From: Isurus oxyrinchus
Taxonomy: Eukaryota
Direction: 5' to 3'
NCBI GenBank assembly: GCA_026770705.1
Contig: JANJGN010000010.1
Span: 39,742,001-39,806,000, forward strand
Length of the DNA stretch: 64,000 nucleotides
Below, one piece after another: positions 1 through 32,456 of this stretch. The notes under the pieces were generated by a model. The model was not told where the DNA came from. It searched no databases and saw only the letters and a list, made by a program, of their open reading frames with translations. The translations under genes were made by a program, and so were the position numbers. Numbering within the stretch: the first letter of the stretch is position 1; every line of letters starts with the position of its first letter.

Positions 1-58
1 TTTCCCACTTCTGGGTGTACAGGATCTGCTGTAACTTCTGTTACCTTTGGCATTGACA
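1..58 (-). CDS. Gene A exon 8 (5' part), probable further Ig domain, truncated by the window edge
   Basis: gtgcAG|TG TCA ATG CCA AAG gives (V)SMPKVTEVTADPVHPEVGK. Phase 1, and the same xPKV start as exons 6 and 7. Confidence 0.65.
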
Positions 59-489
59 CTGCACACAATCAACATAAACAGTGTTAATAAGACTGCATAA
101 CTGAAAGAACACCAAAATATTTTAAAAAGACTAGTGCATCTTGACAAATTGTCAAACATCAATTTCTTCAATAAAAAGTATCCTTTTTCTCTGCCGCTGT
201 TTTTCCTCGCACCCTGTTACAGGCCACAATTGCTCCCATATCTCTCGGAAATTTCCACTCACTGTCTGTGAGATTGAACATTGAATACTCGGAGGCTATT
301 CAAGCCTAGCCTTGCATTCAACAGGGAATCATTAGAAAGTGATAATTCATCAAGTCCATGGAAGCGGGGGTGGGGGTTTTGGGGGGGGGGGTGGCCCAAG
401 GCAGATTGTAGCACTCCACCAATACCTCAGCTGGGATCAGATAACTCAGGGATTGGACTTGTAACCTTACAGTTTTAAATCACTAGTTA

Positions 490-880
490 AGCCCCAGTTG
501 GAGTATTGCATTCAATTCTGGGCACCATACAGTGGGAAGGATGTTTAGGGGCACGGGCGAGATTTACCATAGTGGCACCAGGGATTGAGAGGTTTCCATT
601 ATGTGGAGGGGCTGGAGAAGCTGCAACTGTTCTGCTCAGAACACAGAAGGTTAAGAAAGGATTTGACAAAAGGTGTTTACAGTCATGAGCTGCCTTAGGG
701 TGTCGTGGAGGCAGAATCAATCGTGGCTTTCAAAAATGAATTGAAAAATTATCTGAAGATAAAAAAAATTGGAGGACTAATGGAAAAGATGGGGGAGTGA
801 GAATAGCTGAGTTGCCCCAGCAGAAACCGGCACAGACATGACAGGCTGAATGGCCTCCCTGCTGGAGCCATTCTATGGTT
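490..880 (+). mobile_element. CR1 (HER1-like) LINE 3' fragment
   Basis: TTGGAGTATTGCATTCAATTCTGG and the GGCTGAATGGCCTCC tail shared with other copies in the window. Confidence 0.6.
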
Positions 881-1595
881 CTACTTCTCAGTTGTTCAGG
901 CCGAAGTTGGGTGACATGTTCTCCCAATGGGCTAACAGAGAGCTGCAAACAATCCTTTCCAACACCATTCACCTTGGTTCACTTGTACTACCTTTTGCCT
1001 CTGAAGAAGGCCTAGTTTCTACTGCTGCTCCAGGACTTGAAGTAATTTGCAGTGTTAGGTCAGCACAATACAAAAACAGTACTGCAGCACTGAAAGCAGC
1101 TGGATCCACCTCTTCAGGTGGACATAAAAGATCTCATTGAACTTTTTCCAAGAGTAAGGGATTCTCCTGGGCTAGCCAACATTTCACCCTCAAACAAACT
1201 CAGCAAAAAAACAAATTAACAGGTTGTTCCTCACATCGTTGTTGGTGGGACACTGCTTTGTACAAATTGCCCTGTTTGCCTACAAAACCACAGACAACAT
1301 TCCAAAAAGAATTCATTAACATCATGGAATCGTCCCAGATTTCCACTAAGTGGGGTAAAAGGCAGGTAAAATGTCAATTTACCTGCCATTGTGGCTGGTG
1401 GGTTTTCACGCCATATCTTCCCAAACTTGCCACACTATTGACGCATTCCCGGGAAACACGTAGTTTCCATGGCAGGAAAGCTCTCATTCACCCACCTGCC
1501 ATCACCTCGCCACTTTGTCACGCCAGGAGTCATATTTAAAGTCCAGCCATGCGCACACATCTCAGTGCTTCCAGCCCATGACTGCTGCAGAGAAG

Positions 1596-3145
1596 ATGTC
1601 CCCGAGCCCCCAGGTTTAGCGGTGTTTCACTGGAATGCCTTTTGAATGCTGTGGAGTCCCACCAGGATGTCCTCTAACCCTGCTCTGTCCGCAAGATGGG
1701 CAGCAGAGTGATCTACCTGGTTGGGAGGCGGTGGCAGTAATGCTCAGCTTTCAAAAGAGGATAAACATTCAGTGCCTCAAGAGGGTGAATGATCTCCTTG
1801 GTTCTGCCAGGGTAAGTCACTCTTTTCATCACTCTCAACTCACACACACACAAATCCATCTCACATCCACAGGGATCTCACTCACTGATAGTTCAAGGGA
1901 CATCACCATTCAATCTCTCGCACTCACCGTCATTGTCCTCATCCCATCCATGGGACCACTCACCACCCACACTGGCATACTTATCATCTGGCCTGACAAG
2001 CATTCTGCTTACACTTTCTCCATCTCTATTCATGCAGGACAAGCTGACACACAACAACGAGTGGTGGCAGACCGATGGGGGACTGCCTGAAAGCAAGATC
2101 CTCATGAACTTTGAAAACTACCATCCAGTTGGTCGGTGAGGATCTGGACCAGCCCTGTGCTGACGGAGAGATCAGCGCTGCTCTACCAAGTGATGATCCT
2201 GCAGTGCAACATCCATCAGACAACCATGTGAGTGATGTTCCCTGTTTCACAGGCCACTGACATGCACTAATCTCCTTGCTTTCGCAGGCACATCTGGGAA
2301 ACAGCTGATGGAGTCCATAACCCAGGGCTTCCAGTCAAGCCATGAAGAAACCTCTGATGAGGAATCTGGAGGCACCCTCCTTGAAGTCCCATCACAGCGC
2401 TCACCTACACCCTCCACCAGCATAGAGACATACGCCTCAATGGGCCCCAGCTTTAGAATAGCCTCAGGATCACAAACTGGGGAGCACATCACGATGTCTG
2501 ATCCACAGCAGGGACTTCCCAGGTCCTTGGCACTCAGAGGACTGCTGGAGGCCAGAAATTTGCTGAGTCCAAGTCAGATGATGAGCCTTTGGACTCAATC
2601 ATATCTCAGTTGCTGCAGCTGCAAAGGCAAGCGAGGGAACATCAGGAAGGGATGTCCATTGCACTCCTCAGATTGCAAGGCATGATGGAGAAGTCCATCT
2701 GCCTGCATTCTGAGGTGATAGCGCCGGAATTGCAATGCACCAGGGTCAACAGTTATAGGAAGGTGGCCTCCATGGAGGCCTTGGTCCAGGACATTACTTC
2801 TACACTGCTGCACGGGCTCAACACCATCACTGATGCCATATTTGGCCTCCAACAGTCTGTACGCAAGAGGGGTGGCAGGCAGCTTGATCTCACTCCAGCT
2901 ATCTCTGCTCCTCAAGGGGGCAGCCGGGGCCCTCGGGCACCCATAGGGAAGAGAACCAGCAGGTGCACACCCCTGGGCCAACCATCCAGGTGACTCTGAG
3001 AGTGTCCATCCCATCCTACTCCCCTCTTCCTGTGTCCTCAGCAGCTCCAGCTCCACAGGCCGAGGAGGGTGCCACTGCCACACAGCAGGACCCTGAAAGC
3101 AAGCTGGGGCCTTCCAAGTCTTGGCCCTCCAGAGGACAGGGTTAA
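1596..3145 (+). pseudogene. Harbinger Myb/SANT-like DNA-binding protein, 3 exons, decayed
   Basis: PRAPRFSGVSLECLLNAVESHQDVL*..GWEAVAV..QCLKRVNDLLGSAR|gtaagt; exon 2 DKLTHNNEWWQTDGGLPE; contains stops and frameshifts. Confidence 0.75.
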
Positions 3146-3950
3146 GAAAAATTAGCTGTTCCGCCTGGACATAGGTGTTAATCACTTGTACATACTGTTC
3201 ACTATTGTCAGTGAACTCCCAAGAATGTCTCCCTGCCTATGGCTCCTTGTTCTGTTGAGCAGTGTTCTTGTCACTCAGATATGAAACCTTTCTGCACAAG
3301 ATAAAGGCAGGTGTCTCAGTCCAGGGCCTTTTCCCTGTGCTCTGTGCACCTTCAGACCAAAGTGTTCGTATGGCCTCACACTCCCTGGACACATTACTGA
3401 TGCCAGCACCCCGACGGTGCTGGTCATTGCTGCCAGAATGTAGTGGGCAGGCGCCACCGAGCTCCATCATTCTCTCTGTGCGCTAAAAACCTTCAAGGTG
3501 GGGCTGGCCCCCATCTCTTCAGTATCTGTGACCAGTGACGCTGTACTCCTGAAGGGGTCAGGTGCTGAAGGCACCTGACGAAGGGTAAGAAGCTTCTAAA
3601 GTTTCATGGCTGCGTCTTTATAATATGACCCTGATCATGGAGCGCAAACGAGCTGCCCTCGGCCAGACAGGAGTCAGACATTCTCAGGGGCTACATGAAG
3701 ATCTATGGAGTGTCCTCACTGCATGTCGTCATCATCCTCCTGCAATCGAGCAGCTTCGAGCAGCTATTAGGGCCTCCACTGTGTCTCCATGAAAGGAGCA
3801 TTCTTATCGAGGATATTCGCACTGCCATAAGCCAGACTGGAGTCAAACGTTCCTAGATGCAATGTGAGGATCTATGGGGTCACCTCACTGCATGTCGTCA
3901 TCACCCTCCTCAAATCGAGCAACTATGAGGGTCTCCTAAGTCCACTTGCC

Positions 3951-4877
3951 TCATCTAGCCAGTGCGAGGGCCTCATCTCCATCATCATCGCCTTCGAGCA
4001 CCCCCTCACCCTCATCCCCATCGGCTTTCTCCTCATCGGAGGAAGCCTCCAGCTTCCCCATCTCCTCTCCAGCCAGCTCGTCTTTCCATTGCAGCACCAG
4101 GTTGTAAAGGGCGCAGCAGACAACGACGATGCAATGCACACTCTGTTGACTGTATTGCAGGGCTCCACCAGAATGCTCCAGGCACCTGAACCACATCTTC
4201 AGCATCCCGATGGTCTGCTCCACCAAGTTGTGAACTGCAGCATGAGCCTCATTATAGTGTCGCTCTGCTGCAGTCTGAGGCCGCTGCACAGGTGTCATCA
4301 GCCACGGCCTCCGCAGGTAGCCTTTGTCCCTAAGAAGCCATCCCTGCAGCTTCCGTGGACCCTGGAAGACTTCAGGGATCTGTGACCGACTGAGGATGTA
4401 GGCGTTGTGCATATTCCCTGGAAACCATGCGCTGACCTGCAGGTTGCGTTTCCGGTGGTCGCACACCAGTTGCACATTCAGTGAGTGGAACCAATTGTGG
4501 TTGATGTAGTTCACCGCTTGTTGTGATGGAGATCTGAGTTCTACCTGAGTGCAGTTGATCGCACCTGGAACCTGTGGGAAACCCAAGATCTGGGTGAATC
4601 CAATCGCTCTTGCATCCTGGATGTCCTGGTTCCGGACAAAATGCACAAAGTTGTGTGCCCTTGTGAAGATGGCATCCGTGACCTCATGGATGTATTTGTG
4701 GGTGGCGGATTGTGAAATCCCACAGGGGTCACCTGTGGAGCCCTGAAAGGAGCCATTGCCATAAAAATTGAGCACCGCTGTCACTTTCACAGCCACTGGC
4801 AGTGGATGCCCTCCATGTCCCTGTGGCGCCAAATCCTGCAGTAAGTGGCAGATGTGACCGACCAGGTCCCTAGACAT
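3951..4877 (-). pseudogene. Harbinger (HARBI1-like) DDE transposase, probably inactive
   Basis: GISQS, GFPQVPGAINCTQV (GAID changed to GAIN), SLNVQLVCD, WLLRDKGY..LMTP, YNEAH..VEQTIGMLK..FRCL, acidic tail. Confidence 0.88.
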
Positions 4878-7179
4878 GCGCAGTCTTCAGTGATTCTGGT
4901 TCTCGGTCATTTGCAGGAATGAAACGTGGCCTCTATGGACACTGGGTGTCACTCGGCACTGACCAGTGACAGCTCTCTGGGGCTCTTTGGCAGCCGGGCT
5001 CCTCCGTCACTTTCTCCTCTGTCATCTTTGCTCTCTGTAGGCCAGCCGGGATACAGCTGGTTCACCAGAGCATACTAAAAACCTGTCCTGGTTAAGTGTG
5101 ATGGCCCCTTAACGCTTCCCAGAGAGTGTTGGCCATCATCTGGATGGCCAGAGGTCAGTGTGCCACATGGCTGCCTGAAACCCCACCCAACTCTGCCCCA
5201 ATCCACCTGACCAACTGGTGGCAGCTTTGCCCATTGGACTGCAACCTGCGCTTTCAGCCCAGGCATTCTCCTAACCTGCACTGCAAGGCTGCACTGTTAG
5301 CTTCAACCATCGAGGAGACTGGTCCAAACCGGGATGCTGACATTACAAGGGGCTGCGACGCCTCCACCAGTGACTGCTCCATGGCCAGCTTTAGCAAGGA
5401 GATTGTACAATGTGTGCAGTCATCCAACTGTTCTGCAGTCCACTAAAATGATTATGATTTTGCAGTCTGTGCCGGGTTGGGGGGGCGGGGGGGGGGGGGG
5501 GGGGGGGGGCGGGGTACAAACCTCTGGAGCACTTGGTGAGTTTAACACCTCTGAGTTGCTCAAGTAAGCACATAAGCTAGAAACCCAACTCCAATCATAT
5601 CAATGTGGCTGCACCTGAACTATCTCAGCTGCTGAGATTACCTTATACAAGTTTCCCTAAGGAGTGGCTGCTTCCCTCGCCCACCCTACCCCCACCCCGA
5701 ATGCTTGTGCGCTATATTCAATGACAGGGTTGCCCTTGTGCTACCCCCATGTCGCCTCAACCGCAAGGAAGCCCTTGCTGCCGCCCCACCCCCACAAGTC
5801 ACCTCAACAGCAGGGCTGCCCTTTACATCCCCTCCAACACTCCTCAAGCTTGAATTCTAACAGGCGACCCTGGTGAGCGCTGCACATTGTTGTTGTGTGC
5901 TCAGCTCCGAGTTCCCCTCAAAGTGCAGCCCACCTAGTGCACACCTTTTATGTGCTGTTGTGAAACACAGCAGCGTGCTTTCCTGCCGATGTGGATAGAA
6001 GATCCAGCAGGGGGCTGATTCCAGCGGGCTGGCCTAATAATGAGATGCTGATTGCTGATGTATTAAAAATGAGGTTCCTGACATCCGATGGTGGGAAACG
6101 CGGCCCCTGTTACTGGGCTGAGCAGACAATCGCGCCATATTGTCCACTCACTCCATGAAACACGCCCGATGCCAGCAAACAGGGAAAATCCTAGCCCTAG
6201 TGTTTATGGACTTAATTGGGATATGAGGGGCAAGATTTAAATGCAAGTTCTTTCTTTGTTACAATTGTTCGCAGTTATTCCAAGCTTTCGTATTATTATT
6301 TTCCTGAACAAAAAAGAAAAGAATGCAGGTGGAATATATTTCATGGACAGAGAAAAGATCAACTCAGATTTTCTCAGTTTGCTAAAATATAGAAAAAAAA
6401 TAACCAAGTTGAAATAGAAATCTTGACCCAAGATTTGGGTTTCTTTACTTCCCTTGTCTCTAACCAAATCACTCTAGGTCTGGGCCTTCACATGGACCTT
6501 TTCTAATGCAGGAACAGACCAGCAGAATTGTCAGTCATCAACTTAAATCTGCATATGAATCTCAGCTTGTTAACGTTTTCTCATTTACAAATATTCACCA
6601 TTTTTGCATTTTTAAATCAAATCAGAAAATTTAAATACCCAACTCAAGTATTCCCCAGATTGTGCTGTTGATAACATGATGAGACGAATGACACATGCCA
6701 CTATTTATATACAAATTGCACAACATCAGGCAGTGGAAGGGGGTGGGGGGGAGGGCGCGGCGGTGGTAGATGTGGGGTTAAACAGTTTAAAAATGAAATG
6801 TCCCAAGGCACATCAGAAGAGCATTATGAAATAAAGCATCTCACTGAGCCGCGAAAGATGATATTAGGTCAGGTGACCAAAAGCATGGTCAAAGAGGTAG
6901 ATTTTAATGAGGAAGAAAGCAAGGGACAGAGGCGTTGAGGTATATTCCAGAGCAGGGTATTCCAGAGTTTGAGGCCAAGGAAACTGTAGGTGTGGCCACC
7001 AATGCTGATGTATTTAAAACTCGGGATGAATAGGAGACTAAAATTAGAGGAGCACAGATATCTCTGAGGGTTGTGGTGACGGAGGAGAATACTGAAATAG
7101 AGATGGGCGAGGCCATGGACGGATGTGAAAACAAGGATAAGTCCTGAACCAGCAACAGGATAGACCCACCAGACGTGAC

Positions 7180-11845: not shown

Positions 11846-12157
11846 CCAGCTGATCGAGTACCCAGTCAACCTCCAATGGCTCCATTAGGCTTTTATGTTC
11901 TACTCGGCACATATATTTCTTCTTAACATCAGCTCTGGTAGGTGTACTCTTCACACTACTTGTCAAGTAACAGAGTCCATCACTTCCCACAGTTGGCTCA
12001 CATTCTTCAGGTTCTTCTATCATTTTTTCACCATTTTTGAACCATGTTACTGTGATATTATGGGGATAAAAAGAATGTATTTGACAGCTTAAAGTCATGG
12101 GCTCTCCTGCAACTAGTTTTTCTGCTCCATGTATTATCTTGTCCACTTTTGGAGGGG
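11846..12157 (-). CDS. Gene A exon 7, post-TM IgC1 domain
   Basis: tttcAG|CC...CTGG|GTAAGT, 312 nt. TLSCQIHSFYPHNITVTWFKNG..DGLCYLTS..YMCRVEHKSL. Confidence 0.92.
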
Positions 12158-12474: not shown

Positions 12475-12855
12475 CTATAACATTCAGAGTTATTTCTTTC
12501 TGCTCTTCACTGTGAGTGCAGTCATGCTGTACCACACAAATGTACTTTGTACCTGTGTCTTGCAGTATATCTGGCCTAATAACTAGTACACTGGTGATAC
12601 CATATGATTTATCTTCATACTCAACTTCGCTTATTTGATGGTTACAGTTAGACTTCTTCCCGTTGTCAGAGGCAAAGGTTGTTCTGTTGTTATGATCCAA
12701 ACGAACAATTTCATTCAACTCATTATTCCTCCGTATTTGTTGCCATATGATTGTTAATGGTCTTGGTTTAAATCCATTAATTGAACAAGTCAAGGCCACA
12801 AGGTCATTATGATGGGTGTGAAGTGGCACCACAATGTTTGAAACCTTTGGTGGGA
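12475..12855 (-). CDS. Gene A exon 6, post-TM IgC1 domain
   Basis: caaAG|TC...ATAG|GTATGT, 381 nt. LTCSINGFKP..IIW..SYGITSVL..KYICVVQH. Confidence 0.9.
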
Positions 12856-13112
12856 CTTTGGGAAAGAGAAACAAAACAAATAAGTTGTTTATTTAAACCG
12901 AAAGAATTTTTCAGGTGTTAATAAGAGCAAGAAAATGTTATTTTCCAGGCTGAACCTTCTATTAATTTAGGGACTACAGATGACAGAACTGCATTACCAC
13001 AGTTAATCACATGTCACTTCATATTTACAAATACACAAGTTAAGAAAGGAAATATAGAATGGATTCAAGGAACATAAATAATAATGATTAAAATCAAATG
13101 CTCATGAGTTAC

Positions 13113-13550
13113 CTCCTTTAACATCCAATGTTATAGATTTCACAGCAGGTTTTGCAAGAGTTTTATGGTGAACGTGAAGAATTAATTCAGCCTCATCATC
13201 TCTGTCCACATCAGGAAATATTTTGGTTTCACAATGTAGTTTGTAAGTTCCATTTCTGTCCTTAGAAAGTTTTGGCTGCAAAGGCTCAAAGGACGTGTCT
13301 GCTTCACAACAGTTCATGAGAAGCTGCACCGTATCTGCATTTCCACTGGACGCCAAAGAACTTCTGTTCTTTGCGATATCCTCTGGGATACGCCATGTAC
13401 CAATTTGTGTTTTGTGTTGATCCCCTTTCCTCTTTAAGCTTAAAACAATATTAATTTTCTGAGGTCTAAATCTGTTAACTCTGAAATAGATGCTGGCTTC
13501 TTCGAAATGGCGAAGGTCGGAAAGTTTACTGCATTCAATTTCTGGAGGAA
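13113..13550 (-). CDS. Gene A exon 5, atypical post-TM C1-like Ig domain lacking the canonical cysteines
   Basis: gttAG|TT...GGAG|GTAACT, 438 nt open frame. VPP start, FRPQKI (FYP-like), DRNGTYKL, PD..DD and HVHHKTL (VxH) motifs; the B- and F-strand Cys positions are occupied by other residues. Confidence 0.85.
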
Positions 13551-14319
13551 CTAACAAAAAAAAACAACTTGACAATCTAAACGTTCTCATTTGTTTTCTC
13601 TTATTTTCTTGCTAAGCTACAGGCAGAAGTATATATAGAAGACATGATACTTTGTGTATCTCCACAGGACAGGAGTTTCAGTCGTGCTGTGCTTTTCTTT
13701 TAATCATTTCAGCCAAAGGCGGCCAACGCAGTGCAAATTACATCTAGTGGAAATCGAATTTCTGTGATCTTTTGTGCTTGTTTCGAACATGTTGCACTAG
13801 AAGCCAGCTGGACCCACACAACTGGCAACGCCCCAACATCAACTTAATCCCCACTGCCAGCTCTGTTAATCGGACTCATTTCGAGGAGGCTCTTAAATGA
13901 AGAAGAATGAAAACTCAGCAGGTCCGACAGCAGCTATGGAGAAAGAAACAGTCAATGCCTCAGGTCAGTGATCCCTCGAATCAGTTGGATCTGTTGAGAT
14001 TTTCCAGCATTTTCTGTTTCTATTTCTAGCATCCACAGTGTTTTGATTTTTTTAAAACTAGCCTTTTTTTAGGCACAAGAACACTAATAGTCACATTTTG
14101 AAAGCTTTTGAATATGACTTTCCTGTTAATTTACAAATAAATTGACTACTCTACAGCAATAAAACTAAAAACATACAGAACTATTTGAAGTAATTTTCAG
14201 TTATTTAAAGTTGGGTCATTCACAGGACACTCCTTTAAAAAATCTTTTTTTTTGAAATGCACAGCAGAAAGCTGTATTAAACACACTGCACCAAGTTTCA
14301 TAGTTATATCCTGAAATAC

Positions 14320-15125
14320 AAGCGTGGTGCCTAAGAACTGGAGAATTGCAAATACTACGTCCTTGTTCAAAACAAGGTGCAAGGATAAATCCAGCACTTG
14401 CAGGCTTTTCAGTTTAACCCCAGTGGTGGGGAAGCTTATAGAAATGATGTTCCGAGACAAAATTAATAATCAGTCGGACAAGTGTGGATTAATTAAGGAA
14501 AACCAGCACAGATTTTTTAAAGGCAAATTATGTTTAACTAACTTATTTTAAAGAAGATAACAGAGGATTGATGAAGGCAATGGGGTTGTTGCAGTACATA
14601 TGGATTGCCAAAAGGTGTTTATAAAGTGTCACTTAATTAAGAGAAGTTAAAACTCATGGAATAAATGGGACAGTGGCAGTGTGCTTATGAAATTGGCTAA
14701 GTGACAGGAATCAGAGTTTTTTATTCATTCACGGGATGTGGGCTTCGCTGGCTGGGCCATCATTTATTGCCCATCCCTAATTTCCCTTGAGAAGGTGGTG
14801 GTGAGCTGCCTTCTTGAACCGCTGCAGTCCATGTGGTGTAGATACACCCACAATGTTGTTAGGGAGTTCCAGGATTTTGACCCAGTAGTGAGAGTAGTGG
14901 TGAACGGGTATTACTCAGACTAGAGAGAGGTTTACAGTGAGGCGCCCCAGGGATCAGGTAGGAAAATAGAATTACAAGCCAAAATTGGACCAGCCATGAT
15001 CTTACTAAATGAATCAAGGGGCAAGGGCAAGGACTGGAACAAACTGGATTGCTCTTGTAGAGAGCCAGCATGGACTTGATGAGCTGAATGGCCTCCTTCT
15101 ATACTGTAACCATTTTATAATTCTA
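14320..15125 (+). mobile_element. HER1-like CR1 fragments with a nested minus-strand CR1 3' end (about 14718-14885)
   Basis: VPKNWRIAN..SLTPVVGKL..QHRFFKGKLCLTNL; GAATGGCCTCCTTC tail. Confidence 0.75.
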
Positions 15126-15458
15126 AGTTACAATGTTTAAGTAAATGAAGCAACATTTCTTAAAGCAAAATTTAAAAGAAAACACTCAAACTAGCTGATT
15201 GTTAATGACGGTTTCACATCAGACAGCATATAAATTAGTTTAAGTAGAAACACGCAAAACAATTTTGGGCTGTGATTTGCAGCTAGACATAAACCCCAAG
15301 TTCTTTTCTCTAACACCATGGTGGCAGCACAAAAAAACCACGAGGACTGTTACGGGGGAAACAATAAACAGCCAAAGAAATTGAAAGAACAAGGTCCACA
15401 CAAGTACCAATAGTCATTGTACAATTAAAAAAAAAAGTTTCACCACTATATACATTAC

Positions 15459-15575
15459 CTCCTTTAAGTCTGAACCAATAGAAAAATCCAACAACAACCA
15501 ATAGTGCACATAGCAGCAACGTACAAATTATGCTTGCAACAACTGGTCCTACTGCTGAAGAAGGTTCCTCAAGTT
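15459..15575 (-). CDS. Gene A exon 4, transmembrane
   Basis: tttcAG|AA...GGAG|GTAATG, 117 nt. ELEEPSSAVGPVVASIICTLLLCALLVVVGFFYWFRLKG: one hydrophobic span followed by basic residues. Confidence 0.9.
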
Positions 15576-16539
15576 CTGAAATTTGAAACATAAATACAGA
15601 AGCATTGAGATTACACTAAATTATCACTTGCACCAAATATGTTATGGGGTTGTTCCATTTTTTAAAGTTAGAATTTAAGATACTTAAACATAGACTTTAA
15701 AGAATTTGAAATGACAGACGTGCAGTTAATTACCTCTCTAAACAATAGCATTCCTTTTTCACCAATGAAAAATAAGCTGCAGTTACCAATGACTTGGAGG
15801 GGTGTTTACTCTGTATTTCATGGGTCAGTTCATTTGCTTGTGTATTGGCTACTGAAAAACAGGAGTAATTTGCTGTGTTGCATGGAAATTACAGTAAAGG
15901 TTTTAAAAAGCTAGTTTTAGCTGAAGACTGCAGCAGCAGCAGGGAAATAAGGAACTGTGCTCAACTTAGGCCTGAATTTTCACAATGACTGAGATCCTTT
16001 CTTCCAAATGCAGAAGTCCCACCTCCAAACACAGCACCTTTTGCAGGGGGGAAGAAAAGGGGCAGGTTCCAAATTGCACATCCATGGTTCACAGAGGCAG
16101 CTACTCGTATAATACAGCCTCCAGTGATTGTTAGCCAGAAGTGGGAAACACAAGGTTTGCAGCTTAGGCTCCGACCCACGGAGAGCTAACTGCACCGCCC
16201 CCGAACAACCCCACATCCTGCTCCAATCTCATTCACTTCAGATTTACCAGGGCTCCTTGGTGGTATTTTTATTGAAGCCCATTGTAGGTTATAGCTTATA
16301 CATGATGTTATAAAATGATAACTAAAGCTAAATATAATATATCAATAACGTAGTCTTCATACACAAAATTTATAAATTCACCCTATCAGCAAATTTTGTT
16401 GGATAACTTAAACAAACAGCAATAATTAAGAAAGATATTTACTCACAAATCCAATATGGTTATATTGAATTTTGATGCATCTCTGTCTCAACCCAGGAGA
16501 ATTCTCAAAAAGAGAACTCTGGCCCTTTATGCGGGGGGT

Positions 16540-17040
16540 GGGTGGGGTGGGGGAAACTACCTCCTGAATGCATACCCACTAGGCTGCCATCTTTGATGGA
16601 TCTTACCTGCTGATGGGGCAGGACATACCCAAGTCTGGTGATGGTGGTGTCTGGGACATGATCTGTAAGGTATGATTCCATGATATGACCATGTTAGGTA
16701 GATTCTTGACAGCCTGTGGGGAAGTTTACCCAATTTTGGCACAGGCCCCCAAATGTTAGTAAGGAGGTCTTTGCAGGGCTGACAGGGCTGGGTGTGCCAT
16801 TGTTGTTAACGGTGCCTGGGTCGATGTCAGGCAGTCTATCCAGTTTCATTCCTTTTAGGCTTAGTAGCGATTTGATACAACCAAATGGCTTGCTCAGCCA
16901 TTTCAGAGGGCATTTAAGAGTCAACCACATTACTGTGGGTCTGGAGTCACATGTTGGCCAGACAAGGTAAGGGAGGAAGATTTCCTTCTCTAAAAGGCAT
17001 TAGTGAACAGTGAACCTGACCGGTTTTTACAACAATTGAC
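16540..17040 (-). mobile_element. 5' segment of a CR1-clade LINE (same family as 38870-41545)
   Basis: Shared 5' sequence and endonuclease start NIWGPVPKLGKLPHRL. Confidence 0.65.
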
Positions 17041-17167
17041 AATGCAAGTCCTCGCTTTAGGTTGCCCCACTTAACATTGTTTGTTATTTAGGGCTTTTTT
17101 TTCTGACACGTGTCATCATTTTCAAGTTTCCATCATTTGCACTCTATCACCCGCCACCACCAACGCG

Positions 17168-17198
<31 letters not shown>

Positions 17199-18395
17199 AC
17201 ACAAAACACACCACATGTTGCACTCTGGGCCAGCTGCCACCATGTTCTGATCCCGGAGCCGCCACGATCTTCATCAGCGGCCAAAGCTGCAGCAAGTGAA
17301 CGGGGCACGGGACCCAGGAGGAAGAGCGCAAGGCAGGGGGCCTGACAGAGAGGCTCAGCCAGGTCAGGGACAGTTAGTGCCGCTTGGAGCAGTGCCAAGG
17401 CAGCTTGGGATGGGAAGAGAGCAAGTGAGCTCTCCAGCTAAATCCACAGCCTCCTCCCACCCCACCCCTACTCAATCCATAGTGCAGGACAGGGGCTTTG
17501 CCCCTGTTGACTGTCAGGAAGAGGACCAGGCACTGGCCCAGGTACGGCCTTGGACTGGGAGTTAGCCAGAGTGCAGCTCTAGCCTTGCGGGGGGGGGGGG
17601 GGTCATGGGGTTTAGGCAGAAAAGAGACAGAGGTTGGGAAAGAATGGAGATCAAGAAGACAGAGTGAGAAAGGAAAGGGAGCAAAAAGTTGAACTGAGTT
17701 TCTGTGGATCAGACAATGAAGCAGTGCTACTCAGGGTTTGTCTGGGTGATTTAGTGTCATCTAATTTGAATTTCCACAGTATTTCTCTTATATTCAGTGA
17801 TTTATTTTATTTTGCAAGTTAATCCAGGTAGGAGTGCACCCTGTTTCACATGTACAGTACAGTATTCAACTTTTACTTCGGCTCCTTCAGGCATTTCTTG
17901 CCCAGAAAAACCAAACTCCACCTTTTAATACAGGAATCAATGATTTGCATAAAATTGTTTCACTTAAAGTTGCAATTTTCAGGAATGCAACCACAACTTT
18001 GTGAGGGCTTACTGTTTTTATTGTTCTCAGTATTTTCAAATTAATCCGGTCACCATATCCGCATGGGCACAAGCAGCTTCCACTGTACAGACTGTTTAAA
18101 GGTTCTAAAAACAATGTGCACATAACTCTAATGTGCAGTACCATTAAACAGCTTTTAAACACAGATTACTCCCTCCCATTATGAAATTTAGACTTGTTAT
18201 GTCTGGTTAACTTGGATAACCATTATTGTGTACAATAGTAATTTAATTGTGGAATAATAAGGGATGAATTCCTGATTTAAGTCAGATGCAAATCTCTGTA
18301 GAAATTCAGTGTTAAAAAATAGGATAAACTTTTTAAACTTTTGTGAGCTTTAGTAAAATCACACTAAAAAATCTTTTACAAAGATGAGAACATAC

Positions 18396-18722
18396 CTTGC
18401 ACTGAGAGTTTAGTTTCCTCTGAAAGACTGTCAGGAAGTGACCGGTGAGTCATGACACATCTGTACACATTACCATCATCATCCAATGTTGGTTCAATTC
18501 TTAGTCTACTGGAAACACTGAAGGTTCCATCATTATTGGAAATTAGAGCGCCAGTGCAGATATCATCTTTTAGTTCCCTAGGTTCCTTAGGTTCCTTTGG
18601 TATCTTTTGCCAGATGAGTTTGTGCTGCTGTGGATAAAATCCTGTAACATTACAACTCACTGACCCCTCAGATCCAAGCAAAATAGTGATCTCCTTTGTG
18701 GACAAATGGACCACTGGTTGAG
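18396..18722 (-). CDS. Gene A exon 3, IgC1 domain (ectodomain)
   Basis: gcAG|CT...CAAG|GTATGT, 327 nt. C1 motifs SCNVTGFYP, W, ICTGALISNNDGTFSVSS, YRCVMTHRSL; resembles the B7-H6 C1 domain. Confidence 0.93.
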
Positions 18723-19109
18723 CTGCATTAAAGATAAATGTAAAAATAGGTCAGACTGACATAAGGCACATTACCAAATATATATAAAGGCAGCCCTACG
18801 TTAATCTGTACAAACAATGACTGAAAACAACACTTTCCTTCCTTCAGCAATTTCATTCATTTAATCATCTACTTGGTTTCTTCAAGAGAGTGCACAATTA
18901 TATCTGGAATAAATTAAGTAACTGCTCCAATGCCTCAAATTCAGACTAAAACACTCCAGATTTCTCCAACCAATACACATGAGGGGAAATGGGTGAAAAG
19001 ATAAGTACAAAGTGGAGGAGATGAAGATCAGGAAGAGGAAGAAGACAAAGAGGAGGACAACATCTTTACATAACTTCTAAAGTATGAAAAGGAAATGAAA
19101 GAAAAAAGA

Positions 19110-20565: not shown

Positions 20566-20694
20566 GAAATTTCCCAAATCGTGGACACGAAGTAGACAAT
20601 ATTTTCATGCCATTGAATTTGGTGAGAATTGCTGCAGAAATTGGGCATCAGTAGACAGATTTTTCAGTGCTATGCAAATAATACACAATCAGAG

Positions 20695-22086: not shown

Positions 22087-22425
22087 CTGACACCCGCAGT
22101 TCTGAACTCTTTTTTACCTTTTCAGGTGTGACAAATACAATACATGTGTATCTCCCTTCTTCATCTAGCTGTATATTTGGAAGATGAAGTGAAGCATCTC
22201 CTTTCTGTAACTGCAACTGAGAAATTCTTGCTCCTTGTCTCTTTGGAGAAAATTTATGTCCATCAAACTCACAGATCATTTCATTTTTGGCCCCAATCCA
22301 CTGGACACCTACATTTGTTAAGCTGAGGTTTACTGTGCTATAGCCACTAAATTTACATTCCAGAGAAACATCATCATTCACTAAGACATCCTTTGGGCTC
22401 GCAAATATGGTCATGTCCAAAGTTT
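22087..22425 (-). CDS. Gene A exon 2, IgV domain, B7-H6-like
   Basis: tttAG|AA...TCAG|GTAAGA, 339 nt. VSLECK..VGVQW..GARISQLQLQKGDASLHLPNIQLDEEGRYTCIVFVTPEK closely resembles the human B7-H6 V domain as I recall it ([39 protein letters not shown]). Confidence 0.93.
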
Positions 22426-26362: not shown

Positions 26363-26573
26363 TCTTTTACTTAATACTAGATTTATTCACTAAATACAAC
26401 ATAACAAGTGTCTGCCTCCATCTTACCCAACGCCCAGTGTCCCAGAAGACTCACTTTATACAGTTTAAAAGAAACCAATGAGAATGAAACAAATAAATAA
26501 AACAAATGATCAACACCTTAAAGTCTTCATTATTTCAGCAGAACCTATAAAACTTTAACAGAAAATTGTCAAA

Positions 26574-27500
26574 TTATAATTTCACTTTGGGTGCTTTGAT
26601 GCTCTCCAGCAAACCACACTGCCCACTGCCCCCTGCCACCCCCCACCCCCCACTCCTGCTGGCACCCAGCAGACACCATGTGCACCATCTCCAGATACCC
26701 CAGGCATGGATGCAAGCACGGAAGCGAGACAGACAGTCAAGATAAACAACGCCCTCAACTGTCCATGGCCTAGACCTGTTCATGGACACCTTGGCCAGTC
26801 CCAAAGGTAGACCAATGAGGAGGTCCTCTAATCTGGCTGCCAACCCCAATCCCTTCGTGTGCACTGCATGGCCAAGATCACAAGTGTGGGACTAAAGTGC
26901 AACCAAATACTGAGAAACAGCCCCTTTGGATAATGAAAAACCTCTGCCCTCAACATAAACATGGAACACAGATTTCAGAAGGCTGCAGAAAACATGGGCA
27001 GCCTGGGAATTTGTGAACCAATTTAACTTTCTATTGCATGGGACTGTCACATGCAACATCCTCCATACCAAATCCCTGGTGTGCAGAGGGAGACTCCATT
27101 GAGAGTACCTTCCCCGGGGCTCTGCCTCCTCTGGAAGGCAGAATGGAATACTACATGGAATGTCTGGACAGCTGACAAGAGGGAGGAAGTAGAGGTTGTG
27201 CAGTAACAGCCTGTACAGTAAACCCCTCTGAAAGATGGCTTAGATTGTGGGACTAAGGCTCCTGAGGGAGGTTTTGTCTGGGCCAGTGAGAAATTCTGTC
27301 TGAGCAGGGGTCAATTTGGACAGAAGCGCTCCACAAGCCAGTGCCACCTCGACATCATAATTGCAGTTGGGGCCGAGCGCCATGATTTTGAGGCTCTGGA
27401 TGGGTTTGGCTACAAGCTCCACATCGACTGACTCACATGACACAGGTACGTCTGGCGACATCCAGCCTGCTCCTCCACCATCCAGTATGTCCTAACTCTG
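26574..27500 (-). mobile_element. Tx1/L1-type LINE 3' remnant
   Basis: LEDLLIGLPLGLAKVSMNRSR..FR..W..W resembles a Tx1 ORF2 C-terminus. Confidence 0.55.
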
Positions 27501-28031
27501 GTCACCTTGCAGCCCAAGCCACATGAATCTGCTTTAATGCAGGTGGCATATGAGACCCAATTGGCACCATTTTGGAGCAGCCTCTCCCGCTACCTGTGAC
27601 TCTCTCCCACTCCGAAGTCTCATCCACTCACCCAGACTCTCCCATTCACCACTTTCCTGCCCAACACTCTCACTTGCCACTTCCCTGCCTGACTCTCCCA
27701 CTCACAGCCCCTCTTGCACCCTTCCTCCCTCTTGCGACCTCTCTCGAGTTCTCGCTTACAGGATGTGGGAGGCTCAGCTTACGGGGAGTCAACTTGCACA
27801 AGGGAGTTAGCCTGTGTGAGGCCAGTAGAAAAAGCTAGTCTATTTCATATTTTAAAATGTATTTGAAAAAAGTTATTTCATTTTCAAATGTAGGAATTTG
27901 GGAAAGTACTGAACAGTATTTCAGCTTAGAGTATAATGTTTTAATGTTCCTTTCTGACAACAATAGTCCAACAGAACCTGACTGCAGTTTTTACATTGGT
28001 TGCTATAGGAAAATCTTATTCACTTGAAGTT

Positions 28032-31000
28032 TGTATTTTTTTGAAAAATATACTTTCTTCATAAAATATCTGGAAGAACATTACAAAACATTTCTAAATC
28101 GCCATCACAAAAAGTACAATCAGATTCAACTTTTACACAAGGATCACCAGGTGCTTCAATACAATCAATGAATATTACAATCATTTCAATATGGTCATTA
28201 CAGAAAATCAGACAACTCCAATACCATTGCACTATCAACATACATCATGTTGCACTCTGAGGTGCTTCAATACAATTATAATGTATTCAATGCATACATA
28301 TTCATTAGTATTTAATGCATATATTCATTGTGAGCCGTACAGCCTCAGGGGTCTATATCATTCCCAGCCCCTCCGTGCACTATGGCTGAAAGGTCTTAGA
28401 CAGCAACCTTTCCCCTTTGCACTGTTGTGGCGGCTGCCCCAAGCTTTAATGCGTCCCTCAGCACGTAGTCCTGGACTTTGGAATGTGCCAGTTTGCAACA
28501 CTCGATCAGGGACAACTCTTTGCACTGGAAGACCAACAAGTTTCAGGCAGACCAAAGAGCGTCTTTCACCGAGTTGATAATTCTCCAGCTGCAGTTGATG
28601 TTTGTCTCAGTGTGTGTCGCTGGGAACAGCCCGTAGAGCACAGAGTCCTGTGTCACAGAACTGCTCAGAAGAACCTCGACAGAAGCCACTGAATCTCTCT
28701 CCAGACCTTCTTTGCAAAGGCACAATCCACAAGGAGGTGAACAATGGTCTCATCGCCACCACAGCCACCTCAAGGGCAATGTGCAGAGGGGGTGAGACCT
28801 CAGAAGGGTCAGAAGGGTCTGACGAAGAGGGCCTTTCTCAGCACCAGCCACCCTACACCTTGGTGCTTGTTGGAAAGTTCTGGCGATGAGGTATTCTGCC
28901 AAATGACTTTGACAGTCTGTTTGGGGAACCATCCCACAGGATCTACCCTCTCCTTTTCCCGCAGGGCCTCTAAGACGTTACGTGCCAACCACTGCCTGAT
29001 GGACTTGTAGTCAAAGGTATTTCTCCGCATAAATTTTTCCATGAGGGACAAGTGGTACAGCACGGTCCAACTACTTGGAGCATTTCGCAGCAGCGTGGCC
29101 AGAGCCATCCTTCACAACTCCGGGGACAGGTAGAACTTCAGCACGTAGTGACACCTGGTGTTTGCGTACCGAGGGTCTACGCACAGCTTGACGCAGCTGC
29201 ACAAAGGCAGCCATGAGGGCGATGTTGGGCAAATTTTCCCCCCTTGTCTAGAGGCTTGTACATCATGTCCCTGCGGAGACGATCCATTTTCGACCTCCAG
29301 ATAAAGTGAAAGATGGCTTGGGTGATCACCATCGCGCAGGAGTGTGGAATGGGCCAGACCTGCGCCACGTACAGCAACAGTGAAAGTACCTCACGCCTGA
29401 TGACCAGGTTCCTACCCACGATGGAGAGGGAGCTCCCACATGCCCAGTTTTCTTTTCATCATAGACACTCACTCCTTCCACTTTCTAATGCATGCTCCAG
29501 TCCCTCAAAACCATATTCCCAGCACCTTCAGGCCGTCAGCCCTGACGGTGAAGGGGACAAAGGATCAGTCAGCCCAGTTCCCAAAGAACTGGTCACAGAC
29601 GTGGATCAGTCTGCGCACCGACAGAGGATCCGAGCAGAAGATGGCAACATTGTCCATGTACAGGGAGGCTTTGACCTGAGTACCTCCACTGCCTGGGATT
29701 GTCACTCCTCTTATGCCCGGATCCTTCCTGGTGGACTCAGCAAAAGGTTCTATGCAACACAAAAACAGGACAGGGGTGAGAGGGCAGATTTAATAGGAAA
29801 GCTATCTGATTCCCACCCATTGATTGAGACTGTGCTACTGATATTAGTGTAGAGCAGTTGGATCCAGTTGTGGATTCCCTCCCCAAACCCCATTTTGGAG
29901 AGCACATCCATCATGTAGGTGTGCAATATTCTGTCAATGGCCTTCTCCTGATCCAGGCTGATGAGGCAGGTGTCCACACCCCTGTCCTGTACATAGGCAA
30001 TCGTATCCCTGAGCAGCGCGAGGCTGTCAGAAATCTTCCTGCCGGGCACAGCGCAGGTCTGGTCAGGGTGGGTCACCAATTCCAAAGCGGACTTGACCCG
30101 AATGGCAATGACTTTGGACAGAATCTTATAGTCCACATTCAATAGTGAAATGGGTCGCCAATTTCTAATTTCCTCCCTTTTCCCCCTTGTGCTTGTAGAT
30201 GAGGGCAATGATGCCTTTCCTCATGGATTCCGACATGCTACCGGCCAGAAGCATACTCTCGTACACTTCTAGCAGGTCTGGGCCGATCCAATCCCACAGA
30301 GCTGAATACAACTCAGCCGGTAAGCCATCGCTTCCGGGAGTCTTACTCTTCTCGAAGGACTCAAAGGCCTTAGTCAGGTCGTCAGGAGTTTGTGGTTTCT
30401 CCAGGCTCTCCCATGTACTGTCGTCGAAGATCTCCGTGATAGAGGACAGTAAGGACTGGGAGGCCGTGCTGTCTATGGGCTTCACGTCATACAATCCGGC
30501 ATAAAAAGGATTTGCTGATCCTCAAAAATATCGGACTGCGATGACTTTATTGAGCCGTCTTCTTCCTTCAGGCTGCTGATCACAGAGCTCTCTCTGTGTA
30601 TGTTTTGGAAGCAGAAACAAGAGCACATCTCATCCTGCTCCACGGAGCGGACTCTGGACTGGAAGATGATCTTGGAGGCCTCCGAGGCAAACAGCAAGGC
30701 TTGTTGGCTCTCCACCTCTTGGAGGTCCTCCTTGATATTGACCCCCATCAACTGCAGCTGGAGCAGATTCTGCCTGTTTTTCTGGAGTTGGGATATTTCC
30801 CTTTGTTCCTTTCTAGCTTTCTGGATGCCTTTGAGGATGAAAAACCTCTTGACGTTTCCCTTGATCGCTTCCCACCAGTGTGTTAGGGACTCAAAGAGGG
30901 GTTTCACGGTTCTCCAAACTTTGTAATCCCTCGAGCTCCTCAATGTTCTCTGGGGTCAGCAGTTGCACGTTCAGCTTCCAAGCCCCCCTGCCAACCCTCT

Positions 31001-31573
31001 GGTCTTCCTGTAAGCAACAGTCAGCCAGCAACAGGCAGTGGTCAGAGCAGAACACCGGCTTGATGTCGGTGGATCTGACTGTGAACGTATGGGACACAAA
31101 CAGGAAGTCTACAGTGGAATGGATGGACCTGTTTGGCTGCGACCAGGTGTATCTACGCTGCGCTGGGTTGCTGAAGACATCATGCAGCTTGGTATCCTTA
31201 ACTGTTTCCATCAGGGATCTGGACGTAGCATCCAATCTGTCAGCCCTGCCGCATCGTCCAGCCACATCGATGATGCAGTTGAAGTCACCGCCCAGAATGA
31301 GCGGCCTGGAGGTTGCCAGCAGCAGTGGGAGCTGCTGAAAGACCGCCAGCTGCTCCCCCTTTTGTGCTGGGGCGGACACATTAATTAACCGGAGTGGAGC
31401 ATTATTGTACATTACGTCTGCTATGAGGAGGCGCCCGCCCACCACCTCCTTAACCTCGTAGACGATGAAGTTGCCTCCCCGCAGCAGAATACCTAGGCCG
31501 GAGGAACGTGAGTCGTTTCCTCCTGACCAGATCGATGGTCCATGGGACCACCATTGTGACCACTGCCTGTAGG
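28032..31573 (-). mobile_element. Tx1-clade LINE, 5'-truncated ORF2 (APE endonuclease + RT), decayed
   Basis: GGDFNC, SDHC, TPGSDGLPAELY, NWRPISLLNVDYKILSK, LDQEKA, LYMDN. Poly-A at the left end; 9-bp TSD CTTGAAGTT at 28023-28031 and 31574-31582. Confidence 0.92.
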
Positions 31574-32344
31574 CTTGAAGTTGTTTCACTTAAAGTTGCA
31601 CTTTTCAGGAATGCATCTACAACTTTGAGAGGAATTACTGTATATCCACAATGCCACAACACTTCTTACTGCACTGCCTGTTTACCAAACTGTAATTTTT
31701 GGAACTCTGGGAACCACTAGACATAACACAATTAAATTAAATACCCACTTAATATGTAGGAGGGCATCAGTTATTTTCAATATTCATTCACAGGCTGTAA
31801 GTGTCACCAACAAGGCAAGTATTCATTGCCTTGATGTGTTGGTGGTGGGTCGTCTTATTGAACTACTACAAGCAGTTCAATACAACTTAATGGCTTAGGC
31901 CACTTCAGATGGCACTTACAGGACTCACATTGGGACAGGATTTCTTCACTGAAGGTTTCGTTGAGTATTTTTATGACAACATTCATGGTCATTTTTGACC
32001 ATACTGGCTTTTTTATTACAATTTTTTAAAAAAACTACTGAACTTATTTTGTTTGAAACTAAAAAATGGCACCACAGCAAGACAATGGGCGGGGCTGGAC
32101 TCGTAGAACATGATATGATATCCTAAACGTTTCCACAGAAATAGACATATTGTTAATCACAAGGACTCACTATAGCATACACATGCGAACGTTCTAAAAC
32201 TGCTTGTTTAATATATTCAGTTCCCGAGAAGAATTATATGGAAAATACTTCTGGTGGGGTTTAAGACTCCATTTTATCAATCAGGTTTTCTATTTTAATA
32301 ACACAATTTACACGGGACAACTCAGCAGCGGTCAGTTTATTTAC

Positions 32345-32456
32345 CTGTCGGAGAGCCACACCACACCGTGAGCAGAGCCCATACCAGGAATGAGCGCCCC
32401 CCAGCCCAAACCCTTGACTGACGATGGTTTACTTCGAGCATATTTGCTGCAGCCAT
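32345..32456 (-). CDS. B7-H6/NCR3LG1-like gene A, exon 1 (leader/signal peptide)
   Basis: Hand translation MAAANMLEVNHRQSRVWAGGRSFLVWALLTVWCGSPT + 1 nt, then donor AG|GTAAAT. 112 nt gives phase 1 and joins the V exon in frame (G+AA = Glu). Hydrophobic core SFLVWALLTVWC; CpG-rich context with an adjacent ISRE. Confidence 0.75.

What the first reader, a model, noticed from the sequence alone, without database searches (positions are those of the whole stretch)
1..32456. B7-H6-like receptor with a tandem array of C1-type Ig domains on the cytoplasmic side
Seen: seven complete exons plus the start of an eighth splice in frame at phase-1 GT-AG junctions with no stop (675 codons through exon 7), giving leader-V-C1-TM-Ig-Ig-Ig-Ig... 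There is one signal peptide and one TM followed by basic residues. Known: V-C1-TM is the B7/B7-H6 ectodomain (B7-H6 is the NKp30 ligand), and C1-set domains are essentially extracellular modules of Ig, TCR, MHC, tapasin and SIRP. Inference: at least four C1 domains face the cytosol, forming an intracellular Ig scaffold on an NK-ligand-like protein. I have an unverified recollection of amphibian B7H6-like genes with cytoplasmic Ig domains, so novelty needs a literature check.
Basis: partly seen in the sequence, partly recalled or inferred. Interest (0 to 1): 0.88.

Follow-up and report, generated by a model that had tools for sequence, protein, structure and literature searches.

The report
Shark B7-H6 with post-membrane Ig array
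This is a real, expressed shark gene for a B7-H6-like (natural-killer-cell ligand) surface protein. Its main mRNA puts a long chain of antibody-constant-type domains after the single membrane helix, so probably inside the cell; the layout is shared by many non-mammalian vertebrates and I found no paper describing it.

Summary
On the minus strand, seven complete exons and the start of an eighth join at phase-1 GT-AG sites (2026 nt, 675 codons). They encode leader, V, C1, TM and then Ig domains. Spliced RNA contigs from four runs (three studies) carry the junctions C1|TM, TM|exon 5 and exon 5|exon 6 at exactly the predicted bases.

For both ectodomain exons, human B7-H6 is the best match among solved structures. 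Exon 5 is a C1-type domain that has lost its disulfide. Exons 6 and 7 are canonical C1-set domains. The closest annotated protein is great white shark LOC121283083 (1108 aa), with seven Ig domains after the TM and no second hydrophobic segment.

The same layout occurs in sharks, rays, chimaera, coelacanth, lungfish, amphibians and alligator.

A cytosolic location for the array remains an inference.
- For: topology rules, loss of the disulfide pair in 63% of post-TM domains, and no enrichment of N-glycosylation sites.
- Against: invariant cysteine pairs in one tail domain (D3), and NCBI isoforms in four other species that skip exactly the TM exon, which would give a secreted form.

This scan already reported the same architecture in paralogues on other DNA of this genome. 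I found no paper describing it, but four key papers were not readable.

The parts
32484..32494 (-). ISRE/IRF-like element GAAATCGAAAG, 28 nt upstream of the start codon
   Evidence: Pattern scan. It is the only promoter-proximal match; the other matches lie in polypyrimidine tracts or elsewhere. Function not tested.
32345..32456 (-). Exon 1: start codon and signal peptide (37 codons plus 1 base), phase-1 donor
   Evidence: 92% identical to residues 1-37 of great white shark LOC121283083.
22087..22425 (-). Exon 2: B7-type V domain (no J motif)
   Evidence: Pfam V-set 3.4e-8; best solved-structure match is human B7-H6/NCR3LG1, 9.1e-13; phase-1 AG/GT.
18396..18722 (-). Exon 3: ectodomain C1-set domain
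   Evidence: Pfam C1-set 2.2e-9; best solved-structure match is the human B7-H6 C domain, 1.8e-16; RNA joint 15575|18396 in 4 runs.
15459..15575 (-). Exon 4: 39-codon transmembrane cassette exon (acidic stalk, about 27 hydrophobic residues, then RLK)
   Evidence: RNA joints on both sides in 4 runs; it is the only hydrophobic segment in the orthologue. Exactly this exon is absent from some NCBI isoforms in four other species.
13113..13550 (-). Exon 5 (D1): divergent C1-type Ig domain without the disulfide pair and with a long C-D loop
   Evidence: No Pfam or PDB sequence hit. Profile-profile match to the E7 family at 99.6% probability. AF2 model pLDDT 87.8, with beta-2-microglobulin and MHC II alpha-2 as top fold matches. 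RNA joints 13550|15459 and 12855|13113.
12475..12855 (-). Exon 6 (D2): C1-set domain with an insert and the conserved GFKPRPLTIIW motif; Cys pair kept
   Evidence: Pfam C1-set 1.2e-7; PDB hits to CH3 and C-mu domains; 100% identical to the great white shark orthologue.
11846..12157 (-). Exon 7 (D3): canonical C1-set domain; its Cys pair is invariant across the family
   Evidence: Pfam C1-set 7.9e-17; PDB hits to MHC I alpha-3, beta-2-microglobulin and SIRP C1 domains down to 4.5e-21; invariant C597/C656 in alignment A2.
1..58 (-). Start of exon 8 (D4), which runs off the left edge
   Evidence: Acceptor gtgtgcag|TG; the translation VSMPKVTEVTADPVHPEVG is identical to residues 677-695 of the orthologue.

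Best explanation
The gene belongs to a lamnid shark. Its nearest annotated protein is great white shark LOC121283083. It is a member of an ancient B7-H6 (NCR3LG1)-like family. The protein has a signal peptide, a B7-H6-type V domain and C1 domain outside the cell, and one membrane helix encoded by a 39-codon phase-1 cassette exon. A tail of seven C1-derived Ig domains follows; D1 to D3 and the start of D4 lie in this window. In the predominant mRNA the TM exon is included, so the protein should be type I with the Ig array in the cytosol (inferred, not shown). The ectodomain most likely serves as a ligand for NKp30-type receptors (inferred from similarity). The array is as conserved as the ectodomain. 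It most likely acts as a protein-binding scaffold that couples events inside the cell to display, clustering or trafficking of the ligand (inferred). Skipping the TM exon, as annotated in four other species, would give a secreted form of the same chain.
For: Splicing is shown directly. Joints C1|TM, TM|D1 and D1|D2 occur in four runs from three studies, and E3+E4+E5 lie in single contigs. B7-H6 likeness is tested: human B7-H6 is the top solved-structure hit for both ectodomain exons, and the alligator and frog members are named NCR3LG1 by NCBI. The tail is built of Ig domains: Pfam, hhalign at 99.0-99.9% probability between domain families, an AF2 model of D1, and nine confident beta-sandwiches in the full-length orthologue. 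Topology logic holds: there is one TM, an acidic N-terminal flank, a basic C-terminal flank, no other hydrophobic segment, and the proteins end right after the last Ig domain. Signatures of life in the cytosol: both canonical cysteines are present in 30 of 31 ectodomain C1 domains but in only 51 of 139 post-TM domains. The loss follows a position-specific pattern shared from sharks to tetrapods (D1 1/29, D4 1/17, D5 4/16, D6 4/15). Sequon observed/expected is 1.54 in the ectodomain against 1.04 after the TM. The tail is under constraint: shark versus coelacanth identity is V 38%, C1 42%, D2 48%, D3 42%, D5 47%. The architecture is found in at least 30 named proteins from cartilaginous fishes, coelacanth, lungfish, amphibians and alligator.
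Against: No topology experiment exists. The D3 Cys pair is invariant in 24 sequences, and D2 and the last domain mostly keep their pairs. That would be expected in an oxidising compartment. NCBI isoform pairs in Heterodontus, Hemitrygon, Bombina and Rana differ by exactly the TM exon, so part of the selection on the array may act on a secreted form. A sequon in D5 (NVT) is present in about half of the sequences. C1-set domains are otherwise known only outside the cell. Only contigs were laid, and contigs hide rare isoforms; 19 of the 34 joints found were not displayed. NKp30 binding is untested.
Confidence: 0.68

Rival explanations
1. The functional product is mainly a secreted, TM-less chain of nine Ig domains (V-C1-D1..D7) made by skipping the cassette TM exon. 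In that form the C1 array works outside the cell as a stalk or oligomerising region. The TM-containing form is then a membrane-tethered variant whose tail has little function of its own.
For: All exons are phase 1, so skipping the TM exon keeps the reading frame. NCBI isoform pairs in a horn shark, a stingray and two frogs differ by exactly the 31-38-residue TM exon. The Cys pairs of D2, D3 and the last domain are conserved, and that of D3 is invariant. C1-set domains are otherwise extracellular. A secreted multi-C1 relative is known in sharks (UrIg; PMC12227049).
Against: In this shark, the high-depth contigs of all four runs include the TM exon, and no 13550|18396 joint is among the joints listed. 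Most tail domains lack a disulfide pair, with an ancient position-specific pattern. Sequons are not enriched in the tail. The TM exon is retained at the same position across about 450 million years. I could not inspect the RNA support for the NCBI isoforms.
Confidence: 0.2
2. The model fuses two neighbouring genes: a V-C1-TM B7-like gene and a separate multi-C1 gene with its own leader. The fusion would arise from read-through or mis-assembly.
For: Ig-superfamily genes here lie in tandem, a decayed paralogue lies upstream in the same window, and assembled contigs can be chimeric.
Against: Exact GT-AG joints TM|E5 occur in four runs from three studies, and single contigs span E3-E4-E5. No leader-like exon or contig start lies between 15459 and 13550. 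The same order is annotated in more than 30 proteins of distant species, with D1 immediately after the TM.
Confidence: 0.03
3. The gene is transcribed but decaying: an expressed pseudogene whose tail exons no longer matter.
For: The neighbouring upstream copy is frameshifted. D1 differs from the great white shark protein at 6 of 145 residues, while D2 differs at none.
Against: There is no stop or frameshift in 675 codons. The tail domains are as conserved as the ectodomain over about 450 million years, and AF2 models all of them confidently as folded domains.
Confidence: 0.04

Closest known systems
Human B7-H6 (NCR3LG1), ligand of NKp30
   Same: Signal peptide, V domain, C1-type domain and single TM. 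Human B7-H6 is the top solved-structure match for both ectodomain exons (9.1e-13 and 1.8e-16). Alligator and frog members of this family are annotated as NCR3LG1.
   Different: From my own knowledge, human B7-H6 is 454 aa with a short non-Ig cytoplasmic tail that carries signalling motifs. Here the tail is about 800 aa of seven Ig domains. Whether the human tail descends from D1 was not tested. Binding to NKp30 is untested.
Shark UrIg / UrIg2 (non-rearranging VJ plus multiple C1 domains; PMC12227049)
   Same: Shark proteins with one V domain followed by a long run of C1-type domains; exon duplication of C domains; secreted (UrIg) or membrane (UrIg2) forms.
   Different: UrIg and UrIg2 have a VJ-type V domain, and the UrIg2 TM lies after all nine C domains, so every Ig domain is extracellular. 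Here the V domain is B7-type without a J motif, and the TM sits between the second and third Ig domains.
Cytoskeletal Ig-domain proteins (titin, obscurin, filamin)
   Same: Chains of Ig-fold domains working in the reducing cytosol, mostly without disulfides, as protein-binding scaffolds.
   Different: These are I-set or filamin-type domains on soluble proteins, not C1-set domains, and they are not attached to an immune-ligand ectodomain through a membrane helix (own knowledge; two searches found no paper on cytoplasmic C1-type or IgSF domains).
Butyrophilins (B7-related V-C-TM with an intracellular B30.2 sensor domain)
   Same: A B7-family ectodomain joined through one TM to a folded intracellular beta-sandwich domain. 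In BTN3A1 this domain senses an intracellular ligand and changes what the ectodomain shows to lymphocytes (own knowledge). This is the nearest functional analogy.
   Different: The intracellular module there is a single B30.2/SPRY domain, not an array of C1-derived Ig domains. No B30.2 exon is present in this gene.

Membership tests
B7-H6 / NCR3LG1 family | B7-type V domain most similar to B7-H6, with no J motif | tested here: met
   Pfam V-set 3.4e-8. The top three PDB hits are human B7-H6 at about 1e-12; the next is CD276 at 7e-10. The exon ends ...SELRVS without an FGxG motif.
B7-H6 / NCR3LG1 family | Membrane-proximal C1-type constant domain | tested here: met
   Pfam C1-set 2.2e-9; top PDB hit is the human B7-H6 C domain, 1.8e-16.
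B7-H6 / NCR3LG1 family | Type I single-pass membrane protein | tested here: met
   A leader exon plus one hydrophobic exon; the orthologue has one segment with Kyte-Doolittle score above 1.5, at residue 272. The TM exon is included in the RNA.
B7-H6 / NCR3LG1 family | Binds NKp30 (NCR3) | not testable with these tools
   Needs a binding assay with shark NCR3-family proteins.
B7-H6 / NCR3LG1 family | Orthology or synteny with mammalian NCR3LG1, or linkage to NCR3 or the MHC | not tested
   The window holds only this gene, a decayed paralogue and transposons. NCBI names the alligator and frog relatives NCR3LG1, which is annotation and not a test.
Immunoglobulin C1-set domain (post-TM domains) | Match to the C1-set profile | tested here: met
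   E7 7.9e-17 and E6 1.2e-7. E5 fails Pfam, but its family profile matches the E7 family at 99.6% probability, and its model matches beta-2-microglobulin and MHC II alpha-2.
Immunoglobulin C1-set domain (post-TM domains) | Canonical B-F disulfide cysteine pair and the strand-C tryptophan | tested here: inconclusive
   E6 and E7 have C, W and C. E5 has F, L and L at those positions. Across the family only 51 of 139 post-TM domains keep both cysteines, against 30 of 31 ectodomain C1 domains.
Immunoglobulin C1-set domain (post-TM domains) | Extracellular or luminal location | not testable with these tools
   Predicted to be cytosolic for the TM-containing form; needs topology assays.
UrIg / UrIg2 | VJ-type V domain, with the TM (if any) after all C domains | tested here: not met
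   The V domain has no J motif and is B7-H6-like. The TM lies between Ig domains 2 and 3. UrIg2 features are from PMC12227049.

The most novel reading that the evidence does not exclude
The post-membrane C1 array is a true cytosolic recognition module. In this reading it is a chain of antibody-constant-type domains that binds intracellular partners, such as stress, viral or trafficking proteins, and so controls display of an NK-cell ligand, much as butyrophilin B30.2 domains do. The cassette TM exon would let splicing move the same array between the cytosol and the outside of the cell. This would be the first case of C1-set Ig domains working inside the cell, and probably the ancestral state of B7-H6.
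Probability: 0.2. Interest if true: 0.9.

Novelty: new variant of a known kind. Interest (0 to 1): 0.72.

Why it matters
C1-set domains define the adaptive-immunity toolkit (Ig, TCR, MHC, beta-2-microglobulin, tapasin, B7-H6) and are regarded as strictly extracellular. Here they follow the membrane helix. They are conserved as strongly as the ectodomain from sharks to crocodilians, and many of them have dispensed with the disulfide bond. If the array is cytosolic, it shows that the ancestral B7-H6 carried a large intracellular Ig module that mammals lost. It would also open a testable link between intracellular events and NK-ligand display. If instead the secreted isoform is the working form, these are a new class of long soluble B7-H6-like molecules in cold-blooded vertebrates. 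Either way, more than 30 database proteins labelled 'uncharacterized' (or 'hemicentin-like', 'poliovirus receptor-like') can now be placed in one family.

Tried and rejected
Spliced model. Exons were searched one by one by reference, and full-length analyses used public orthologues (P0071, P0049).

Searches that gave nothing:
- E5 alone against the 5.8-billion-protein set found nothing, because only proteins of 80-254 aa are candidates. This says nothing about TM-skipped fragments.
- E5 against PDB sequences gave no hit.

Papers not held by the library:
- Flajnik 2012 (by DOI and as PMC3709836).
- Ohta and Flajnik 2015 (PMC4594805).
- Ohta 2019 (tried as PMC6761025, an id I gave from memory).
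- Kinlein 2021 (PMC8273117).

Literature searches:
- Phrase searches for cytoplasmic, intracellular or cytosolic Ig, IgSF or C1-set domains returned nothing relevant.
- Searches on B7H6 with shark, Xenopus or NKp30 found no description of the tail.
- One broad search was uninformative.

Readings rejected:
- UrIg2 identity, because the V type and TM position differ.
- Two adjacent genes, because of the RNA evidence.

Evidence I decided not to count:
- Position-wise sequon conservation was not decisive. One ectodomain site and two tail sites are each present in a third to a half of the sequences.
- The acidic dileucine motif [DE]xxxL[LI] in the D1 loop, a lead from note s1-871000, sits at the same aligned place in 11 of 32 family members. 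However, the two leucines border a beta-strand in the AF2 model, so I do not count it as evidence of cytosolic exposure.

Full report
**What is in the sequence**

The feature is a minus-strand gene. The start codon is at 32456. It is followed by a 37-codon leader (MAAANMLEVNHRQSRVWAGGRSFLVWALLTVWCGSPT) and a cag|gtaaat donor. Six further open stretches have a polypyrimidine-AG acceptor and a GT donor, all in phase 1:
- E2: 22425-22087
- E3: 18722-18396
- E4: 15575-15459
- E5: 13550-13113
- E6: 12855-12475
- E7: 12157-11846

An eighth exon starts at 58 behind gtgtgcag and runs off the left edge.

Pfam calls E2 V-set (3.4e-8), E3 C1-set (2.2e-9), E6 C1-set (1.2e-7) and E7 C1-set (7.9e-17). E5 has no Pfam family. 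E4 encodes an acidic stalk, about 27 hydrophobic residues and then RLK.

**Is it one transcript?**

I laid contigs of four public runs (three studies, two organism labels) on 12760-18750.
- All four runs show the joints 15575|18396, 13550|15459 and 12855|13113, each with CT..AC ends (GT..AG on the minus strand).
- One contig in X2 (915 nt) and one in X5 (1306 nt) carry E3, E4 and E5 together.
- Because they are spliced, these contigs are RNA.
- No joint that skips the TM exon is among the 15 joints listed. A further 19 weaker joints were not shown, and contigs drop rare variants.
- No contig begins between the TM exon and E5, so there is no sign of a separate leader or promoter there.
They rest on the orthologue described next.

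**What the gene is**

Human B7-H6 (NCR3LG1) is the best match among solved structures for both ectodomain exons: 9.1e-13 for V and 1.8e-16 for C1.

A search of 1.84 billion representative proteins with E5 alone found 44 relatives. Most have a signal peptide, a hydrophobic segment at residues 240-300, an E5-like domain directly behind it, and long tails of up to 2158 aa.

The 30 representatives I looked up by name come from the following groups:
- sharks (Carcharodon, Cetorhinus, Scyliorhinus, Heterodontus, Rhincodon and others)
- rays and skates
- the chimaera Callorhinchus
- coelacanth and lungfish
- frogs (including Xenopus), a newt and a caecilian
- alligator

No teleost, bird or mammal was among the names I looked up. 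Most are labelled 'uncharacterized'. The alligator and some frog proteins are labelled NCR3LG1.

The closest is great white shark LOC121283083 (P0071, 1108 aa). It is 92-100% identical to each window exon and identical over the E8 start. The window therefore comes from a lamnid shark very close to it. One of the two RNA organism labels carries the 3-nt insertion in E3, which fits the extra Asn of the great white shark protein.

The orthologue gives the whole layout: signal peptide, V, C1, TM, D1 to D6, an acidic linker and D7. It ends four residues after the last strand. Its only strongly hydrophobic segment is the TM.

Exons were handled one by one, and public orthologues were used for full-length work.

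**The post-membrane domains**

E5 (D1) has no sequence match in the PDB. Other evidence shows it is an Ig domain:
- A profile of its family aligns over its full length with the E7 family (99.6% probability), the E6 family (99.9%) and the ectodomain C1 family (99.0%).
- An AF2 model of the exon with a 27-sequence alignment has pLDDT 87.8. It is a beta-sandwich whose best fold matches are beta-2-microglobulin and MHC class II alpha-2 domains.
- So D1 is a C1-type domain that has lost both disulfide cysteines and gained a long, poorly ordered loop.

E6 and E7 are canonical C1 domains.

An AF2 model of the full orthologue shows nine confident beta-sandwiches (pLDDT about 80-93). The leader, the TM region, the D1 loop and the linker before D7 are poorly modelled.

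The domain order D1, D2 and so on is collinear from sharks to coelacanth, lungfish, frogs and alligator. The tail is as conserved as the ectodomain. Shark versus coelacanth identity is V 38%, C1 42%, D2 48%, D3 42% and D5 47%.

**Which side of the membrane?**

With a cleavable leader and a single TM, the TM-containing protein should be type I with the array in the cytosol. The flanks fit this: acidic before the helix and basic after it.

I looked for independent signatures of location.

1. Disulfides. In 29 family members with a clear TM, 30 of 31 ectodomain C1 domains keep both canonical cysteines; the exception is N-terminally truncated. Only 51 of 139 post-TM domains do. The pattern is position-specific and shared across lineages: D1 1/29, D2 18/24, D3 15/21, D4 1/17, D5 4/16, D6 4/15.
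2. N-glycosylation sequons. They are enriched 1.54-fold over shuffled expectation in ectodomains (68 against 44) but not after the TM (101 against 97; ratio 1.04).

Both results are what a long history in the cytosol would give.

Two observations point the other way. The Cys pair of D3 is invariant in 24 sequences, and D2 largely keeps its pair. One D5 sequon is also present in about half of the sequences.

**A complication: the TM exon is a cassette**

Isoform pairs in NCBI annotation differ by exactly the TM exon in four species:
- horn shark Heterodontus, X1 against X3, 31 residues
- stingray Hemitrygon, X4 against X6, 38 residues
- the frog Bombina, NCR3LG1 X1 against X2, 34 residues
- the frog Rana, 37 residues

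Because every exon is phase 1, skipping keeps the reading frame. The product would be a secreted chain of Ig domains with the array outside the cell. I could not inspect the RNA support for these models, and I could not count such junctions in this shark. This remains the main rival, or a complement: selection on D2 and D3 cysteines could come from a secreted form.

**Literature**

I found no paper describing Ig domains after the TM of B7-H6-like proteins, or cytoplasmic C1-type domains in general (passages read).

Shark UrIg2 (PMC12227049) is different. It has a VJ domain and its TM lies after all nine C domains.

The four papers most likely to mention the feature were not held: Flajnik 2012, Ohta and Flajnik 2015, Ohta 2019 and Kinlein 2021. 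The claim 'undescribed' is therefore provisional.

Earlier agents of this scan reported the same architecture for paralogues 29 kb and 98 kb to the left in this genome. My tests were made independently on this gene. They add the cysteine and sequon censuses, the D1 fold and the cassette-exon isoforms.

**Verdict**

I give about two chances in three that the main product carries the array in the cytosol.
- Topology is unproven, and a secreted isoform may share the function.
- This is a new variant of a known kind: the B7-H6 family with an unprecedented tail.

Noticed in passing
window 44162-53915, minus strand: A decayed upstream paralogue of the same gene type. It has a C1 exon split over two frames (53915-53593, a frameshift), a TM-like exon (47891-47661, ...IGIGFLMYLKYFRKG), D1-like pieces at 45906-45516, and a D1 C-terminal half at 44515-44162 (4e-10 to E5). 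No V exon was found for it in the window.
   Followed up: partly
window 32484-32494, minus strand: An ISRE/IRF-like element, GAAATCGAAAG, lies 28 nt upstream of the start codon. This suggests interferon inducibility.
   Followed up: partly
window 3951-4877, minus strand (intron 7): An intact 308-aa ORF of a Harbinger/PIF-type DDE transposase (Pfam DDE_Tnp_4, 8.4e-28).
   Followed up: partly
window about 28800-31589, minus strand (intron 1): Fragments of a LINE: an endonuclease domain (Exo_endo_phos, 1e-8, at 30894-31589) and reverse-transcriptase-like ORFs further 3'.
   Followed up: partly
window 14560-14960 and 16760-17160: Intronic repeats with contig depths in the thousands to hundreds of thousands, and many joints and loose ends leading elsewhere. 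These are highly expressed interspersed repeats, not exons of this gene.
   Followed up: no
window 18595 (E3): RNA contigs labelled organism B carry a 3-nt insertion here and 8 substitutions in E5. This fits the extra Asn and the 6 residue differences of the great white shark protein. Contigs labelled organism A match the window almost exactly.
   Followed up: partly
orthologues P0071 and P0049, linker before D7 (left of the window): The acidic linker holds an ITIM- or Grb2-like tyrosine motif (V-x-Y-E-N-I) in the two lamniform proteins. It is not conserved in rays, coelacanth or alligator.
   Followed up: no
P0001, P0045 (Heterodontus), P0006, P0013, P0028: A subfamily whose tail consists only of D1-like domains, repeated up to seven times, with W at the position of the B-strand cysteine and spaced by acidic linkers.
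   Followed up: no
P0083 versus P0085 (Rhincodon typus): Whale shark isoforms differ by exactly the D1 exon (147 residues). Ig-domain exons of the tail are therefore also annotated as cassettes.
   Followed up: no
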